Source of the DNA: Oculina patagonica
Taxonomy: Eukaryota
NCBI RefSeq assembly: GCF_052425735.1
Contig: NC_135765.1
Span: 32,488,001-32,552,000 of the forward strand
Length of the DNA: 64,000 nucleotides
Reading direction: 5' to 3'
The translations under genes were made by a program, and so were the position numbers. Shown in pieces: positions 30,901 through 36,655 of this stretch (positions within the stretch are counted from its first letter, which is position 1; each line of letters starts with the position of its first letter). The notes under the pieces are model-generated. The model saw only the letters and a program-made list of their open reading frames with translations, searched no databases and was not told where the DNA came from.

Positions 30901-33900
30901 AACTCTTGAAATTCACGGTTAAATTTGCTCTTGAATATTGTCTTCACTTTCGGTTGTTGCTGAAAATGGCGAAAAAAATCGCGCGGTAAGTTTTCGTCTT
31001 CGTTTTACAATGCTTTCTTCATCCTTCAGTTTGTGGAAACAGACGGCCATTTTGTTTTCAAAGCATGTGCTTTCACTTGCATAAATTAGTTTTCCAAATA
31101 TGGAAAGTAGTGCCCAGTTTTTCCCAAAACAGAAGAGGTCGTTTCCAGCTGTTTTTTTTGGCCGCTAAAGGGGCCACGGGTGTTACACGCACTTTTAATT
31201 TTTGGCCTCTAAAGGGGCCACGGGTGGTGAAAGGGTTAAAGTAGAATAGATTTTAAAACATGTCAAATGTTGTTTGTAGAAAAATGTTTTATTACTTATA
31301 AAACAAGTTGAATGAAATGCCTGAAAAGTGTGGACTAATGGCAACTTATTACACATATATAATGATAAGCAAATTGATCATAATATAGACTAATATCATT
31401 GACAACTTTTAATATCTTCTTTGTATTGTAACATAAATTCTGTGCGAGTCATCTATCTGGCTGGTGTGATCATCAGTAGATTAGCAGCCATTTTTCCTTT
31501 TCACCAAACAATTTGTAGCATTCTGAATGATGGTCGATATTAGTACTGATTGAAAAAAAACACTTACAAGACACTTTTCGGAGAATGTTTGATCAGCTAT
31601 CATCATCCATCAAATGTTACCAATAAAAAAGCCTTTTTATTTGGGATTTTATCTGGGACTATGTTTGGTATTACAGTCAACTCTCTCAGTTAACAGACAC
31701 CTCTTAAGACGGACACCTGGTGTTGGTCCTGCCTCTGCCGTTTTTCAGTCATTTTACTGTAACTAAATTCCCTATAAGACAAACACCTCTTTCAGATGGG
31801 CAGTTGGAACTGGTCTCGACGGTGTCAGTTTTTGAGAGAGTTTACTGTACCCATGGAAAGGGGATAGTTGGCCATGTATGGGATCATTTCAAAAGTAAAT
31901 GGAGTGGGGCAATAAATATCTTCTTTGGTACTTAAATACATGCAATATGATTTATGTGGGGGGTGGGGGGACGATAACTAGGAAGTATTACAAATGAGGT
32001 ATTATATTTTATACCACGCCATAGAAAATACAGCCAATCAGAATACAGGAAAGCAGTTGTATATTCGACGGTATTCAACCCAACCTTCCCATAGTGCGCT
32101 GCGACTGTATTCTCGACGAAATTTAGTAAGCGTATTTTCTATGGCATGGTATAAAATAGTTACACAACACTTTCTCGTGGTATACTATGGAATATCCCAC
32201 TTGTCACTTGTATTTTCTTGGCATACACACTCGCCTAAAGGCTCGTGTGTATACCGAGAGAAAATACAAGTGACTCGTGGGATATTCCATAGTATACCAC
32301 TCGAAAGCGTTGCATAACTAGTATATAGAAGGTACATCCAATATGGGTTGCCGAAAGGAAGTAGAAATAGAAAGCCAGGACAATAGTAGGTGTTTCTGTA
32401 GAAGATCGAGCTGTAGTCAGATAGCGGAAAAAACTTCATGACCTGTACATTTCAGCTTCTTATTTTACTCTATGACGGTTGACTCACAAGCCAGCAATCT
32501 GTTAAATGAAAATCTCATTGAAAGCGCTGTTAACATTTTCACAATTTTAACTAAAGCTCAAGATGCTTGAGCTTAAAATTTGATGGTGACTATTTTGGCA
32601 ATTTGTCACTGATGCATTTGTGGTTAAATCAAGTTGACGCAAGTGAAGCCTCATTTACTGCTGAACTTGTCAGTAAATTATTGGTGTATAGGAAAGATAT
32701 GTCATTGCTCTCTTTAATACTGGTAGAATGATGTGACATTCAGAAGTATCATAAAGCCATACATTTTCTCCCTGTTTTTGACAGCAATTTGTTCCGGTGC
32801 CTGTTTCTAAATTTGGCCATCAAATTCTTCATGTTTCATGACTTGGTTGTCTTCCAGTAGAGACAAACAAGGAAGATAAAGTGAGGAAAGACACCTCACT
32901 TCCAAGAAAATCTTCAATTGAACAGTCATTCTTTATTTAACTGCCAGATTGCAGTCATTCCTCTTGAAGAAAACATCATTGCTTACAGAAATCATTTCAT
33001 TCCCAAATCATTTGTTTGCTTCTTTGGCTTGTTAGCACAGTTTTTGTTTTACTCACAAGCACAAAGGTTGTAGCGCAGCTAGCCAGAGGTAGATCACAGT
33101 AGCATGCTATGCAACTCACCTCGTACATTTGATGCACGTTGCACATCTTACGTATTATGGTTGCCATGGTTCCAACAGGTTAACTCAGGCACATGTTTTG
33201 CTTGTCTTGCATAGCAATGCCATGATGACCGAGGTGAAGACTCTACTGATCATTACCAGCCTGCGCCTCATTTCCCTCCTGAGCAGCATTTTGAACATGC
33301 TCCTTACATACCGCCGCCTGAACAGTTTCACCACCCACCTCCACCACCACCCCCACAGTACCATCCGCCACCGCCACCCCCTCAGTACCACCCTCCACCG
33401 CCACCCCCACAGTACCACCCTCCACCTCAACATCATGAACACCACCACCACCCTCCCCCGCAGCACCATGAGCACCACCACCCCCCACCGCACCACCATG
33501 AACCACCTCAACACCATGAGCCACAGCATCACCACCCTCCCCCACATCATGAGCCACAGCACTACCACCCACCACCACAACATCATGAACCACAGCATCA
33601 CCACCATGAACCACAGCACCACCACCATGAGCCACAGCATCACCACCCTCCCCCACAACACCATGAACCACAGCATCACCACCATGAGCCACAGCATCAC
33701 CACCCTCCCCCACAACACCATGAACCACAGCATCACCACCATGAGCCACAGCATCACCACCCTCCCCCACAACACCATGAACCACAGCATTACCACCATG
33801 AGCCACAGCATCACCATCATGAACCACAGCACTACCACACACCACCTGAACATCATGAACCACAGCACCACCCTCCACCACCTCAGCACTATGAACCCCC

Positions 33901-36655
33901 ACCCCCACCCCCACCTCAAAGCTGGCCAGTGGAGACGCCACAAGCATACTTTGACCATCAAGAGGCTCCAGAGTTTAAAAATGTAGGCATTTTTGTTTTT
34001 TTTTACAGTGTGTGCTACATGTTTGGTGCATTCTGTATGTTGTTTGCCAGTATGTTTATTTTTGCATTTTGTTTGTGTTGATTTCAGTTAGGATTTAATT
34101 TTAATTTGCTATTGTCCTTCCCTGAAACTATTACCGCATTTAGTAACTAGGAAAACCTATTTACCCAGGCAACGTGATCGATATGATATAAAATATCTAC
34201 TTATGTGTGAAGTTCTAAGTAGTGATACATACACTGTTACGTTGCTAGCTCCTGTAAAATTCTGGGTAAGCCAGGCTAGGCTTGTGTTTGTTTAGAGTTA
34301 GCTATCCTTTGTTCTGGTGGCTTGTTATAAGAAGGGATTTTATTTCCATCTGAGACCTGCGAATATTAGCGAAGTTCCACAGCAGCCTCAGAGCGGAGCC
34401 CCATAACCATAGAAAATCCACAGAAATAGGAGAACCATGCATTTGATTTTTCATGGTCATCGTGACTAGCAGCATGGCTCTAGGGCACATGCACCCACTG
34501 TCTGAGGACGTCGCGTAACATAGTTGCCAATCTCCAGAAGAATGGCCACTATGAGGTTATCAAGGAGGCTATCAAGGTTAATATCAGCTAATATCTTTGA
34601 TACTGGGTATCCATGCATGTTATGGTCAATTGACAGCTGTCAATTCAAGGTATCTGCCGAACTCATCGAGGTCACAAATGTTTTTCTTTTAAGTTGACCA
34701 CCAACAACTGTGCCTGGAACGCGACTTATTCCTTATTTTTTCCTGTTTATGCTCAGTGAATTCAGATATTTAATAAAGGGCAAAGTAATTAACCCGGGAG
34801 CTCTGCTTTTAGGCTTGGCTTAATATAATAATTTATTAATACTCTAATTCAGGCATGTGTGATGTTTCCTGTCTCCCAAAGGAACATGGGAGAGTTAATT
34901 ATTCCATTTAATCATTCAGTAGAATTTTTTTAGTTATTTGTAACAGTTTTAGATTTAGCCATAAGCTGATAAGTTTGAAATAATCGAATAATAATACTAA
35001 GGTGAAAAACGGAAACAAATATTCTTGATATAGAGTGTAGTGTAAGTCCTTGGAGAACGTGGGGGACTCCCATTTGAAAAAGAAGTGAGTGCTCATTGTC
35101 TTACCAAGGGGTATACGTTGTTCAGGACAGAACCCCGGAAGCTTTAGTTGTTATAGTCTTGTTATTAGGGTGGCACATGAATAAATAAATACAAAAATCA
35201 CTAATTTAAATATAATCATACTGTGTTGGCAGTATAGAACGGTCAGACGACATGGTCTTTTTTAGAGGTCAACAAATGTGTAAACCACACCCAGTTTGGT
35301 CTCCTTAAGGGGTAATTTATTTCAAATTTTCTGACAAGCATTCCCACGTCTTCATCTGCGAGTCCCCCCTGTCCCCAGGTGTGAAGTACAGTGAAACAAC
35401 TAAATGGATAAAAAATTATGAATAGGGTATAGTGATACTTCTTATTTAAAACGGAGTCAATTTCTTTTGATTTTTGAAGCGATACTATAATCACTGTAAT
35501 AGCATATTAATTCTTCTTAAACTGGTCAATCCTGGACAAGTCTACAACTTGTGAGAATAAGGCTACTGATTGCAGTTTTGCCAATCATAACACAAGGAAA
35601 ATATGGAGACTAACTAGGCTGCATCAACATGAAGTGTTTTTTTATGCTTCAAAATATAATAAAATAAAATATCAGTCCCTGAATAAAACAAATAACTATA
35701 CAGGGTTCGTACACGTCTTGAAAACCCTTGAATTTCAGGAGTTCAATTTCAAGGCGTAAATGAAAGTACTTGAAATTGGTTTTCGGTACTTGAAAGTTCT
35801 TGATTTTTTTATTGAACCACAGCAATACCACACACCACCTGAACACCATGAACCACACGACCACCCTCCACCGCCTCAGCACTATGAACAAGGCAATGAG
35901 AAGACCGCCAAAATAAGCGATTTTTTTAGTTCTTCAGCAAGCACATCAACGTCACAACAGACTGGAAATCGTTGGTTGGAGGTAAATTTCATAAAAAAAG
36001 TCCTTGAAATTTCCAAAAAGGGTCCTGGAAAGTCCTTGAAAAAGTCCTTGAATTTTTGGCCTGAAAAGTGTACGAACCCTGAATATACTTAAGTAGTAAA
36101 GAGACCCTTTTTAGTGCACAGAAATGTTTCTTACTAGATTTTACACTAATGTAAGATATTGATAGTGGGGAGAGTGGAGGTGTGCTAGTGTAACAATAAA
36201 TTTTTTGTAATGAGTAACAACAGAGTAGGAGATCTTGCTTCTGCAGATTGGCAAACGTTTTTGAAGTTATGCATGTTCGTTGCTGCAGGCTTCTATCAAG
36301 AAGGTTGAAATCAAGTATTTGATGTGAAGTGCATACTTTGATGTTGTGTGATCTGATTTCACTCTTAGGTGATCAACCTTAATCTCTCTTCGAGTTTATT
36401 TTTTTCATTTTGTTTGCACTTCAGGAACCGCACATTGAAGAACTAGAAAGTGGAGTATCTGATATGTACATTGAAGATGAGCTCATCGCTGAATTAGACC
36501 CAGTGCTTCAAGACCTTGCTCATCAGCGTGCATGGGAAAGTGGTGAAGTAGATTATAAAGGCAAAGACAAGTTTGACAACATCCAGAAAAGAATTCAGGA
36601 ATTTATCGGAGTGTTGAGGGATCCCACAGATGTCCCCATGTTCTTGTTTTTTTAG
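24993..36655 (+). CDS. GYG1: Glycogenin (GT8 family) with a His/Pro-rich linker exon and C-terminal glycogen-synthase-binding tail
   Basis: Exons 24993-25150, 27169-27506, 28703-28829, 29379-29556, 33215-33982, 36425-36655. Motifs: [46 protein letters not shown] (DxD), [30 protein letters not shown] (autoglucosylation Tyr region), [13 protein letters not shown]. Tail: [22 protein letters not shown]. Confidence 0.93.
27827..28637. mobile_element. PIF/Harbinger-like MITE interrupted by a TA-TSD MITE (28007-28452)
   Basis: Outer TIRs aggctggctttcactagcga ... tcgctagtaaaaaccagcct. Inner element TA-ccttattataggaaattaac ... gttaatttcctatattaagg-TA with many aattaacgcg subrepeats. Confidence 0.7.
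30505..31239. mobile_element. piggyBac-type non-autonomous element (TTAA TSD)
   Basis: TTAA-ccctttcaccacc ... ggtggtgaaaggg-TTAA, with a subterminal direct repeat (taaaggggccacgggtg x2). Confidence 0.85.
33215..33982 (+). CDS. GYG1: His/Pro/Gln/Glu repeat exon of glycogenin (768 nt, phase 0/0)
   Basis: Acceptor cttgtcttgcatAG|caatgc and donor aaaaat|GTaggc. The frame is open throughout: [16 protein letters not shown]...PPPQYH...([19 protein letters not shown])n...EAPEFKN. Confidence 0.75.
35701..36081. mobile_element. MITE (TIR cagggttcgtacac) carrying a captured glycogenin exon fragment
   Basis: TIRs cagggttcgtacac ... gtgtacgaaccctg. 35813-35889 matches 33820-33896 at 72/77 nt. Confidence 0.9.

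What the first reader, a model, noticed from the sequence alone, without database searches (positions are those of the whole stretch)
33215..33982. Glycogenin with a 256-residue His/Pro/Gln/Glu repeat cassette in the linker to its glycogen-synthase-binding tail
Seen: a 768-nt stop-free exon with good splice sites, phase 0 at both ends, between the last catalytic exon (ends 29556) and the exon encoding the W-E-x-G-x-x-D-Y-x-G-x-D-x-F-D-N-I tail (36425). The ORF track shows only shadow frames. It encodes PPPPPQYH and [19 protein letters not shown]-type repeats, by eye roughly one third His and one third Pro. Established: this tail tethers glycogen synthase, and glycogenin linker length influences glycogen particle size. 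Inference: including or skipping this frame-neutral exon could switch between short- and very-long-tether glycogenins. The poly-His/Pro spacer could make tether length, condensation or metal binding sensitive to pH or Zn/Cu/Ni, which would matter for carbon storage in a probably photosymbiotic host.
Basis: partly seen in the sequence, partly recalled or inferred. Interest (0 to 1): 0.82.

Follow-up and report, generated by a model that had tools for sequence, protein, structure and literature searches.

The report
Coral glycogenin His/Pro-rich linker exon
A real, transcribed exon of the glycogenin gene of the coral Oculina patagonica encodes a 256-residue histidine/proline repeat that lengthens the tether between the glycogen-priming enzyme and its glycogen-synthase-binding tail. 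The exon is an old linker cassette of corals and anemones that grew here by tandem duplication; its proposed pH or metal role is untested.

Summary
Window 33215-33982 (+) is a stop-free 768-nt exon with AG/GT borders and phase 0 at both ends, coding 32% His and 32% Pro. The six-exon model including it translates exactly to RefSeq XP_078381112.1 (Oculina patagonica, "uncharacterized protein LOC144663905 isoform X2", 599 aa), so the exon is already annotated, though not named glycogenin. An RNA contig joins 33982 to 36425 (GT..AG).

The exon is orthologous to a linker exon in Stylophora, Pocillopora, Acropora, Montipora, Porites, Actinia and Nematostella. Shared features are a QC start, a P[YF]IPxP motif and a SWPxET...FK[HN] end. 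Oculina expanded the middle through 27-nt and 57-nt tandem units; Porites expanded independently.

Two tests support coding constraint. Repeat-unit differences pile up at codon position 3, and two haplotypes differ with pN/pS 0.24 plus an in-frame 18-nt indel.

Paired inclusion and skipping isoforms exist in RefSeq for Stylophora, Pocillopora and Actinia, and as transcript assemblies resembling Acropora and Porites. The skipped form was not shown directly in Oculina.

The tether-length role is inferred from glycogenin literature. The pH, metal and condensation ideas rest only on composition (modelled pI 6.3-6.8). This is a new variant of a known kind, of moderate interest.

The parts
24993..25150 (+). 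Glycogenin exon 1 (start codon, [17 protein letters not shown]...)
   Evidence: the exon set translates exactly to P0005 (XP_078381112.1).
27169..27506 (+). Exon 2, core of the GT8 catalytic domain with the DxD motif (FLDADT)
   Evidence: Pfam PF01501. PDB glycogenin-1, E 5e-48. D107/D109 invariant.
28703..28829 (+). Exon 3, carrying the acceptor tyrosine region (SYTYAPAF)
   Evidence: aligns to residues 162-202 of human and rabbit glycogenin-1, with Tyr at the positions of Y195 and Y197; both invariant.
29379..29556 (+). Exon 4, last catalytic exon, ending ...VQPEMR in phase 0 with donor AGG|gtaggt
33215..33982 (+). Linker cassette exon: 768 nt, 256 aa, 32% His and 32% Pro, phase 0/0. This is the finding.
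   Evidence: RNA joint 33982>36425, and a contig starting at the acceptor; identical to the RefSeq model.
33215..33328 (+). Non-repetitive N-flank of the cassette (QCHDD...[14 protein letters not shown]), conserved in Hexacorallia. The P[YF]IPxP motif lies at 33302-33319.
   Evidence: the motif is present in every hexacorallian inclusion isoform held (13 of 147 proteins) and in none of the non-hexacorallian glycogenins.
33338..33426 (+). 27-nt x3.3 tandem repeat encoding PPPPPPQYH, giving three PPxY motifs unique to Oculina
   Evidence: all 6 inter-unit differences are synonymous third positions..
33471..33816 (+). 57-nt x6.2 tandem repeat ([19 protein letters not shown]-type units); the lineage-specific expansion
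   Evidence: mismatches enriched at codon position 3, p 5e-4 to 2e-8.
33899..33982 (+). C-flank of the cassette ([29 protein letters not shown]) and a weak donor AAT|gtaggc
   Evidence: conserved SWPxETxQ...FK[HN] in Scleractinia.
35823..35981 (+). Optional 159-nt exon (phase 0/0) inside a MITE that carries a 77-nt copy of the cassette end. Present in isoform X1 (652 aa).
   Evidence: adding it reproduces P0124 (XP_078381111.1 / KAL9965789.1) exactly. RNA support was not resolved.
36425..36655 (+). Last exon: glycogen-synthase-binding tail ([21 protein letters not shown]) and stop codon
   Evidence: matches the C-termini of glycogenin-1 and -2 and the C. elegans GN34 peptide 4qlb_G.

Best explanation
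Window 33215-33982 is exon 5 of the Oculina patagonica glycogenin gene (LOC144663905). [quoted passage not shown]

Shown: it is spliced to the tail exon in RNA. It is part of the RefSeq protein. It is orthologous to a linker exon conserved across Hexacorallia, with non-repetitive flanks and a P[YF]IPxP motif. Its middle was expanded in the Oculina lineage by tandem duplication of 27-nt and 57-nt units to 256 residues that are one third His and one third Pro. Its reading frame is under purifying constraint.

Inferred: the product is a disordered, polyproline-II-rich spacer. It raises the distance between the end of the catalytic domain and the WExG tail motif from about 36 to about 292 residues. 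By analogy with in-vitro glycogenin work, this should change how far bound glycogen synthase can reach from the primer and hence granule size distribution.

Inferred by homology: the exon is a cassette, because orthologues are annotated or assembled both with and without it. Much of the extra length may simply be tolerated replication slippage in a permissive linker. Any pH or metal responsiveness is a plausible physical consequence of 81 histidines, but it is not demonstrated.
For: - Identity of the gene: Pfam GT8; PDB glycogenin-1 E 5e-48; acceptor Tyr region; GS-binding tail including 4qlb_G.
- Exact match of the spliced window model to XP_078381112.1.
- RNA: joint 33982>36425 GT..AG in run X9 at depth 32. 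An X2 contig begins at the acceptor (33214/5) with 14 non-intronic letters before it. Exon depth is 24-50 against 0.4-12 in non-repetitive intron. Exon k-mers are held at 0.5-0.9 in RNA runs of three organism labels.
- Orthology and conservation: the Logan transcript-derived protein P0004 and RefSeq proteins of Stylophora, Pocillopora, Acropora, Montipora, Porites, Actinia and Nematostella.
- Skipped counterparts: P0125/P0126 (Stylophora and Pocillopora X2, 342 aa), P0016 (Actinia X2), and Logan P0008, P0010-P0013.
- Coding constraint: third-position excess among repeat units. Haplotig L001 differs by an in-frame 18-nt deletion and 6 synonymous/6 non-synonymous changes, pN/pS 0.24, p 0.016.
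- Independent expansion: the Porites unit [13 protein letters not shown] differs from the Oculina unit, with unexpanded relatives in both suborders.
- Linker-length effect: PMC9188544 and PMC12267440.
Against: - No skipped transcript of Oculina was seen. RefSeq lists only inclusion isoforms (599 and 652 aa), and the database held no 343-aa Oculina form.
- The only hints of skipping are weak. Tail depth exceeds cassette depth. Two tail contigs have a G before 36425, which fits exon 4 or the MITE exon but not the cassette. Contig depths are a poor measure.
- The haplotig carries an extra C in a C-run inside the exon. If real, that allele is frameshifted in the inclusion form, which would argue for relaxed constraint.
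- No structural or biochemical test was possible. The AlphaFold model was uninformative.
- No homologue of the repeat exists outside this gene, so function cannot be transferred.
Confidence: 0.8

Rival explanations
1. Regulated sensor. The His/Pro cassette is an alternatively spliced module that responds to pH and/or metals (Zn, Ni, Cu). Protonation or metal chelation of about 81 histidines changes tether dimensions or drives condensation, coupling glycogen granule growth to intracellular pH changes caused by symbiont photosynthesis.
For: His is 32% of the exon. The modelled net charge flips from about -19 to -25 at pH 7.4 to +13 to +34 at pH 6.0, with pI 6.3-6.8. His content rises from 8-11% in anemones to 14-20% in other stony corals and 32% here. 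The host is a facultatively symbiotic coral (identified). Non-synonymous differences between haplotypes mostly keep the H/Y/Q/P character.
Against: There is no experimental or comparative test. No similarity was found to known metal-binding or pH-sensing His-rich proteins. Porites expanded a variant with far fewer His (17%), so length or Pro content may matter rather than His. The expansion could be mutational slippage of a CAC/CAT-rich tract. Condition-dependent splicing has not been examined.
Confidence: 0.15
2. Neutral coding minisatellite. The exon is real and translated, but its extra length in Oculina is a selectively near-neutral product of replication slippage or unequal exchange in a disordered linker that tolerates almost any length. 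Only the flanks and the P[YF]IPxP motif are functional.
For: Glycogenin linkers vary widely in length and sequence across animals (PMC9188544). The repeat units are young (84-90% identical). There is length polymorphism between haplotypes (18-nt indel). A parallel expansion occurred in Porites. A possible frameshift exists in the haplotig.
Against: Synonymous excess among units and between haplotypes shows that the peptide sequence, not only the frame, is constrained. The cassette has kept its H/P/Q/E character since the anemone-coral split. In-vitro work says length matters.
Confidence: 0.3
3. The segment is an intronic minisatellite, and the annotation and open frame are artefacts of a C/A-rich repeat that lacks stop codons.
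For: Two + frames and one - frame are open. The RNA runs also contain unspliced contigs across both borders at low depth.
Against: There is a canonical spliced joint to the tail exon. Orthologous transcripts in other corals carry exon 4, the cassette and the tail on one contig (P0004 from a 2174-nt Logan contig). Non-repetitive flanks are conserved at protein level over the whole of Hexacorallia. Differences show a third-position bias.
Confidence: 0.02

Closest known systems
Variable linker of animal glycogenins, and its alternative splicing (human GYG1 isoforms GN-1, GN-1L and GN-1S; C. elegans GYG-1 isoforms; the GYG2 long linker)
   Same: The position is the same: between the GT8 domain and the roughly 34-residue GS-binding tail. 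The linker is disordered and variable in length, and in-frame optional exons occur. Linker length governs particle size in vitro (PMC9188544, citing the C. elegans GS-GN34 work), and the GYG2 linker may influence particle size (PMC12267440).
   Different: Here almost the whole linker is one 768-nt exon made of His/Pro/Gln/Glu tandem repeats (32% His, 32% Pro). None of the other glycogenin linkers fetched looks like this. The cassette also carries a hexacorallian-specific P[YF]IPxP motif.
Orthologous cassette in other Hexacorallia (RefSeq isoform pairs: Stylophora pistillata X1/X2, Pocillopora verrucosa X1/X2, Actinia tenebrosa X1/X2)
   Same: The exon sits at the same position and phase. It has the same QC start, the P[YF]IPxP motif and, in stony corals, the SWPxET...FK[HN] end. 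It has the same H/P/Q-rich character.
   Different: Those cassettes are about 100-145 residues with 8-20% His. Oculina has 256 residues and 32% His. Oculina has no annotated skipped isoform but has an extra MITE-derived exon.
His/Pro-rich region of vertebrate histidine-rich glycoprotein (GHHPH tandem repeats), a Zn2+ and pH sensor. This comparison is from general knowledge and was not tested here.
   Same: Tandem short repeats dominated by His and Pro. The expected His pKa lies in the physiological range, so charge and metal binding could switch near neutral pH.
   Different: No detectable homology. HRG is a secreted plasma protein, whereas this is a cytosolic enzyme linker. The repeat unit is different and contains Glu and Gln.
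Coding minisatellites and low-complexity repeat expansions in disordered regions
   Same: Tandem units in multiples of 3 nt, in-frame length polymorphism between haplotypes, and parallel expansions in related lineages.
   Different: This one is embedded in an anciently conserved exon with conserved flanks. It shows a synonymous excess, so it is not merely drifting.

Membership tests
Glycogenin (CAZy GT8, EC 2.4.1.186) | GT8 Rossmann-type catalytic domain | tested here: met
   Pfam PF01501 on exons 2 and 4. Exon 2 matches PDB glycogenin-1 and -2 chains at E 5e-48.
Glycogenin (CAZy GT8, EC 2.4.1.186) | DxD motif for Mn2+/UDP-glucose | tested here: met
   FLDADT in exon 2. D107 and D109 are invariant in alignment A1.
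Glycogenin (CAZy GT8, EC 2.4.1.186) | Self-glucosylated tyrosine (human Y195, with Y197 beside it) | tested here: met
   Exon 3 aligns residue for residue to 162-202 of human 7q0b_E and rabbit 1ll2_A. Tyr occupies both positions (Y200 and Y202 of P0005, invariant in A1). The Y195/Y197 roles are from PMC12267440.
Glycogenin (CAZy GT8, EC 2.4.1.186) | C-terminal glycogen-synthase-binding motif (GN34, W-E-x-G-x-x-D-Y-x-G-x-D-x-F) | tested here: met
   The tail exon matches the C-termini of glycogenin-1 and -2 (E 6e-6) and the C. elegans GN34 peptide 4qlb_G (E 0.005).
Glycogenin (CAZy GT8, EC 2.4.1.186) | Autoglucosylation and priming activity | not testable with these tools
   Needs an enzyme assay.
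Alternatively spliced cassette exon | Exon spliced into mature mRNA at both borders | tested here: met
   The 3' border has the joint 33982>36425 GT..AG (X9). At the 5' border, X2 contig record 19 starts at 33214/5 with 14 unaligned letters before it. The RefSeq model is identical. Orthologous single-contig transcripts carry exon 4, the cassette and the tail.
Alternatively spliced cassette exon | Skipping keeps the reading frame | tested here: met
   Phase 0 at both ends. The predicted skipped product is 343 aa and ends in the normal tail.
Alternatively spliced cassette exon | Skipped mRNA present in the same species | tested here: inconclusive
   No Oculina skipped protein is in the databases. 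Tail contigs with G at -1 and a tail-to-cassette depth excess are only hints. The skip-junction 32-mer is absent from JGI metagenome contigs, which is uninformative. Skipped forms exist in Stylophora, Pocillopora and Actinia (RefSeq) and in Acropora-, Porites- and Montipora-like Logan transcripts.
Histidine-rich pH/metal-sensing disordered region (HRG-like) | Very high His content in tandem repeats | tested here: met
   81 of 256 residues are His; tandem units of 27 and 57 nt.
Histidine-rich pH/metal-sensing disordered region (HRG-like) | Sequence relationship to a characterised His-rich sensor | tested here: not met
   No Pfam family. An exhaustive phmmer search gave only 3 weak low-complexity analogues, none a known sensor.
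Histidine-rich pH/metal-sensing disordered region (HRG-like) | Measured metal binding or pH-dependent conformational or phase change | not testable with these tools
   Only a charge model is available: pI 6.3-6.8.

The most novel reading that the evidence does not exclude
Hexacorallian glycogenin carries an ancient, alternatively spliced His/Pro cassette that acts as a pH- and metal-tunable tether or condensation module and holds a conserved P[YF]IPxP docking motif. Under this reading, symbiotic corals have repeatedly lengthened it (Oculina, Porites) to couple glycogen granule size or assembly to the pH swings imposed by symbiont photosynthesis.
Probability: 0.12. Interest if true: 0.75.

Novelty: new variant of a known kind. 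Interest (0 to 1): 0.45.

Why it matters
How glycogen granule size is set in vivo is still open. The only handle so far is that glycogenin linker length changes particle size in vitro, and that the human GYG2 linker may matter. Corals and anemones offer a natural series: the same cassette absent, about 100 residues, about 195 residues (Porites) and 256 residues (Oculina), with paired skip and inclusion isoforms. This series could be expressed and compared directly.

The extreme His content gives a simple, testable prediction of charge reversal near pH 6.3-6.8. O. patagonica can live with or without symbionts, so isoform use can be compared within one species.

There is also an annotation point. 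RefSeq calls this clear glycogenin "uncharacterized protein", probably because the repeat dilutes coverage by homologues.

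Tried and rejected
- Exhaustive phmmer of the exon against 1.84 billion cluster representatives gave only three weak low-complexity analogues. The repeat has no homologue outside this gene, and its own full-length protein was not recovered that way.
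- Pfam found nothing on the cassette.
- An AlphaFold2 run on the 13-sequence alignment A1 failed overall: mean pLDDT 33.6, with even the catalytic domain below 50. I draw no structural conclusion from it and ran no fold search.
- A scan of JGI metagenome contigs for the exon 4/tail skip junction returned 0 hits. This is uninformative because Oculina transcripts are unlikely to be there.
- Rfam on 29557-36424 returned no family.
- I considered that XP_078354963.1 (P0143, 350 aa) was a real short allele made by recombination between the cassette end and its 77-nt copy in the MITE. I rejected this. The haplotig L001 is colinear with the window over the whole region. The model merely splices around a +1 C frameshift.
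- The intronic-minisatellite reading is rejected (see rival explanations).
- Direct retrieval of the Oculina RNA contigs that end at 36424 was not possible: read laying allows one call, and their loose ends were not among the rows shown.
- The predicted 343-aa skipped protein has no reference id. I therefore did not type it into the look-up of encoding contigs.

Full report
**The observation**

Window 33215-33982 on the + strand is 768 nt (256 codons) without a stop. It is preceded by a pyrimidine-rich tract and AG, and followed by GTAGGC. It encodes 82 Pro (32.0%), 81 His (31.6%), 31 Gln and 25 Glu.

Tandem Repeats Finder reports a 27-nt unit x3.3 (33338-33426, PPPPPPQYH). It also reports a 57-nt unit x6.2 (33471-33816, built from HEPQHHH and [12 protein letters not shown] blocks).

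Openness alone is weak evidence. The tract is C/A-rich, and a second + frame and one - frame are also open. The decisive evidence therefore has to come from splicing and conservation.

**The gene**

Stop-free segments upstream and downstream carry a GT8 domain (Pfam PF01501). They match solved glycogenin-1 and -2 structures at E 5e-48.

Exon 3 aligns residue for residue to positions 162-202 of human and rabbit glycogenin-1. Tyr occupies the positions of Y195 and Y197 (roles of these residues from PMC12267440).

The last exon (36425-36655) matches the C-termini of glycogenins and the C. elegans GN34 peptide crystallised with glycogen synthase (4qlb_G).

A search over splice-site combinations found one model: 24993-25150, 27169-27506, 28703-28829, 29379-29556, 33215-33982, 36425-36655. 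Its translation is identical to P0005, which is XP_078381112.1, [quoted passage not shown], 599 aa.

The window is therefore from the stony coral O. patagonica (Scleractinia, Vacatina, Oculinidae).

**RNA evidence**

The exon's 31-mers are held at 0.7-0.9 in contigs of RNA runs of two organism labels, and at 0.4-0.67 in a third, closely related label.

I laid four runs on 30701-36700. The main results were:
- Run X9 has a contig joining 33982 to 36425 (skips 2442 nt, GT..AG, depth 32).
- X2 has a 342-nt contig that starts at the acceptor (33214/5) with 14 letters before it that are not intron.
- Depth over the exon is about 24-50, against 0.4-12 over non-repetitive intron.
- Unspliced contigs across both borders exist at low depth (5-9), as expected from pre-mRNA or DNA carry-over.

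It is supported instead by the RefSeq model and by orthologous single-contig transcripts (see below).

**Conservation**

A word-indexed search with the exon found P0004 (443 aa, from a 2174-nt Logan contig). In it...VRPEMR is followed by a cassette of about 100 residues and then the tail. The cassette starts QCHGG, contains [14 protein letters not shown] and EPFIPPPP, and ends PPPHSWPTETSQGY...FKH.

P0004's 90% cluster contains RefSeq isoform pairs: Stylophora pistillata X1 (443 aa) and X2 (342 aa), and Pocillopora verrucosa X1 (441 aa) and X2 (342 aa).

Searching with P0004 recovered further inclusion forms:
- Porites lobata (535 aa)
- Acropora millepora (486 aa)
- Montipora capricornis X1 (414 aa)
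- Actinia tenebrosa X1 (446 aa)
- Nematostella vectensis X2 (437 aa)

It also recovered skipped forms, in which ...P[EG]MR runs straight into the tail:
- Actinia X2 (341 aa)
- Logan transcript-derived proteins of 339-344 aa that match Acropora, Porites, Montipora and a close relative of Oculina (P0008, P0010-P0013)

The two short Exaiptasia isoforms X2 and X3 (336 and 319 aa) also lack the cassette, although they lack the MR residues before the junction.

Alignment A1 shows the following:
- The cassette always starts QC.
- It always contains P[YF]IPxP. This motif is found in 13 of the 147 proteins held, all of them hexacorallian cassette-bearing proteins, and in no other glycogenin.
- In stony corals it ends SWPxETxQ...FK[HN].

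Counted from the end of the catalytic domain (…PEMR) to the WExG tail motif, His content is 8-11% in the anemones, 13-20% in the other stony corals and 28% in Oculina; within the Oculina exon itself it is 32%.

Porites has its own expansion of a 13-residue unit ([13 protein letters not shown]). Porites (Refertina) and Oculina (Vacatina) each have unexpanded relatives in their own suborder. The two expansions are therefore independent.

**Coding constraint in this frame**

All 6 of 6 do so in the 27-nt repeat. At lag 57 the count is 36 of 67 (p 5e-4), and at lags 21 and 36 it is 58-64 of about 100-107 (p 4e-7 to 2e-8).

An unplaced 7273-nt contig of the same assembly (JBPAPT010001041.1, locus L001) is a 94-97% identical second haplotype of 28451-37509. 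Its copy of the exon differs in three ways:
- An in-frame 18-nt deletion (six residues).
- Twelve substitutions, 6 synonymous and 6 non-synonymous, against 148 and 620 sites. This gives pN/pS 0.24, with p 0.016 for synonymous excess.
- One extra C in a C-run near 33702.

The non-synonymous changes are mostly H to Y, Q to H and P to Q/R.

The extra C may be a long-read homopolymer error or a real frameshift allele; I cannot tell which. RefSeq's model for that contig (XP_078354963.1, P0143) avoids it by splicing from inside the repeat into the 77-nt copy downstream. That model is an annotation workaround, not a recombinant allele.

**Is the exon alternatively used in Oculina?**

Skipping would be frame-neutral and would give a 343-aa glycogenin very like the skipped forms of relatives.

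I found no direct evidence for it:
- RefSeq has only X2 (599 aa) and X1 (652 aa).
- The protein collection holds no Oculina skipped form.

The hints are limited to three points:
- Tail-exon contig depth exceeds cassette depth in all four runs. In X9, for example, the tail is at 53.8, the included joint at 32 and the unspliced form at 9.2.
- Two tail contigs (X2, X10) align from 36424. They therefore have a G before the exon. This fits the end of exon 4 or of the MITE exon, but not the cassette end ...AAAAAT.
- The cassette donor (AAT|gtaggc) is weaker than that of exon 4 (AGG|gtaggt).

I rate the cassette behaviour in Oculina as probable by homology, not shown.

**Mechanism**

Shown: the exon supplies almost the whole linker.

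From established knowledge: the C-terminal roughly 34 residues of glycogenin anchor glycogen synthase. The linker is variable, and its length governs particle size and mass distribution in vitro (PMC9188544). The human GYG2 linker may influence particle size (PMC12267440).

Inference: a tract that is 32% Pro and 32% His is disordered and polyproline-II-rich. Inclusion raises the spacer between the catalytic domain and the WExG motif from about 36 to about 292 residues. That corresponds to a contour length of roughly 13 versus 100 nm, and a random-coil Rg of roughly 1.6 versus 4.9 nm by a generic scaling law.

With model pKa values, the exon's net charge goes from about -19 to -25 at pH 7.4 to +13 to +34 at pH 6.0 (pI 6.3-6.8). 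A pH- or metal-dependent change in dimensions is therefore physically plausible, but wholly untested.

Equally plausible is that much of the Oculina-specific length is tolerated slippage in a permissive linker. In that case selection would act mainly on composition, the flanks and the P[YF]IPxP motif.

**Comparison with what is known, and novelty**

Variable, alternatively spliced glycogenin linkers are known. This exon is annotated, and its orthologues have annotated isoform pairs.

I found no paper describing a His/Pro-rich glycogenin linker, the conserved hexacorallian cassette or its motif.

The repeat has no homologue elsewhere. It resembles histidine-rich sensor regions only in composition.

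I class it as a new variant of a known kind, with moderate interest (0.45). Its functional proposals remain hypotheses.

Noticed in passing
window 35823-35981 (within the MITE at about 35701-36081): A 159-nt, phase-0/0, AG/GT-bounded segment is annotated as an extra coding exon. It starts inside the 77-nt copy (35813-35889, 94% identical to 33820-33896) of the cassette end and runs into MITE sequence. Adding it to the model reproduces XP_078381111.1 / KAL9965789.1 (652 aa, isoform X1) exactly. A relative's contigs (L002, L003) join 35701 directly to 36084, which is an empty site, so the insertion and its exonisation are recent. RNA support for this exon could not be resolved because other MITE copies dominate the depth.
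   Followed up: partly
L001 (JBPAPT010001041.1, 7273 nt), exon copy at 3269-4019; corresponds to window 33215-33982: The second haplotype of the locus has an in-frame 18-nt deletion and an extra C in a C-run (window about 33702) that breaks the frame. RefSeq XP_078354963.1 (350 aa) avoids the break by an implausible splice from the repeat into the MITE copy. Whether the extra C is an assembly error or a real allele is open.
   Followed up: partly
window 31700-32500 (intron 4): An element of about 700 nt has very high summed contig depth in all four RNA runs (up to about 52,000, against 20-200 for the glycogenin exons), with many internal joints. There is no Rfam family. It is presumably an abundant, transcribed repeat or transposon family.
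   Followed up: no
window 33338-33426: The PPPPPPQYH repeat creates three PPxY motifs (PPQY), the classical WW-domain ligand pattern. None of the seven other hexacorallian cassettes examined has one.
   Followed up: partly
window 33302-33319, and orthologues in alignment A1: A short motif P[YF]IPxP, usually followed by x[QH][FY], is conserved in the cassette from sea anemones to stony corals and is absent from the other glycogenins fetched. It is a candidate docking motif of unknown partner.
   Followed up: partly
P0009 (Montipora capricornis isoform X1) and P0014 (Porites evermanni): The Montipora X1 model ends inside the cassette without the glycogen-synthase-binding tail. The P. evermanni model lacks the cassette's N-flank and carries about 90 extra residues before the tail. 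These are either real variant isoforms or annotation errors in a repeat-rich exon.
   Followed up: no
window 24993-36655: RefSeq names this gene product 'uncharacterized protein' although every defining glycogenin feature is present. The long low-complexity exon probably lowered homologue coverage in the naming step.
   Followed up: yes
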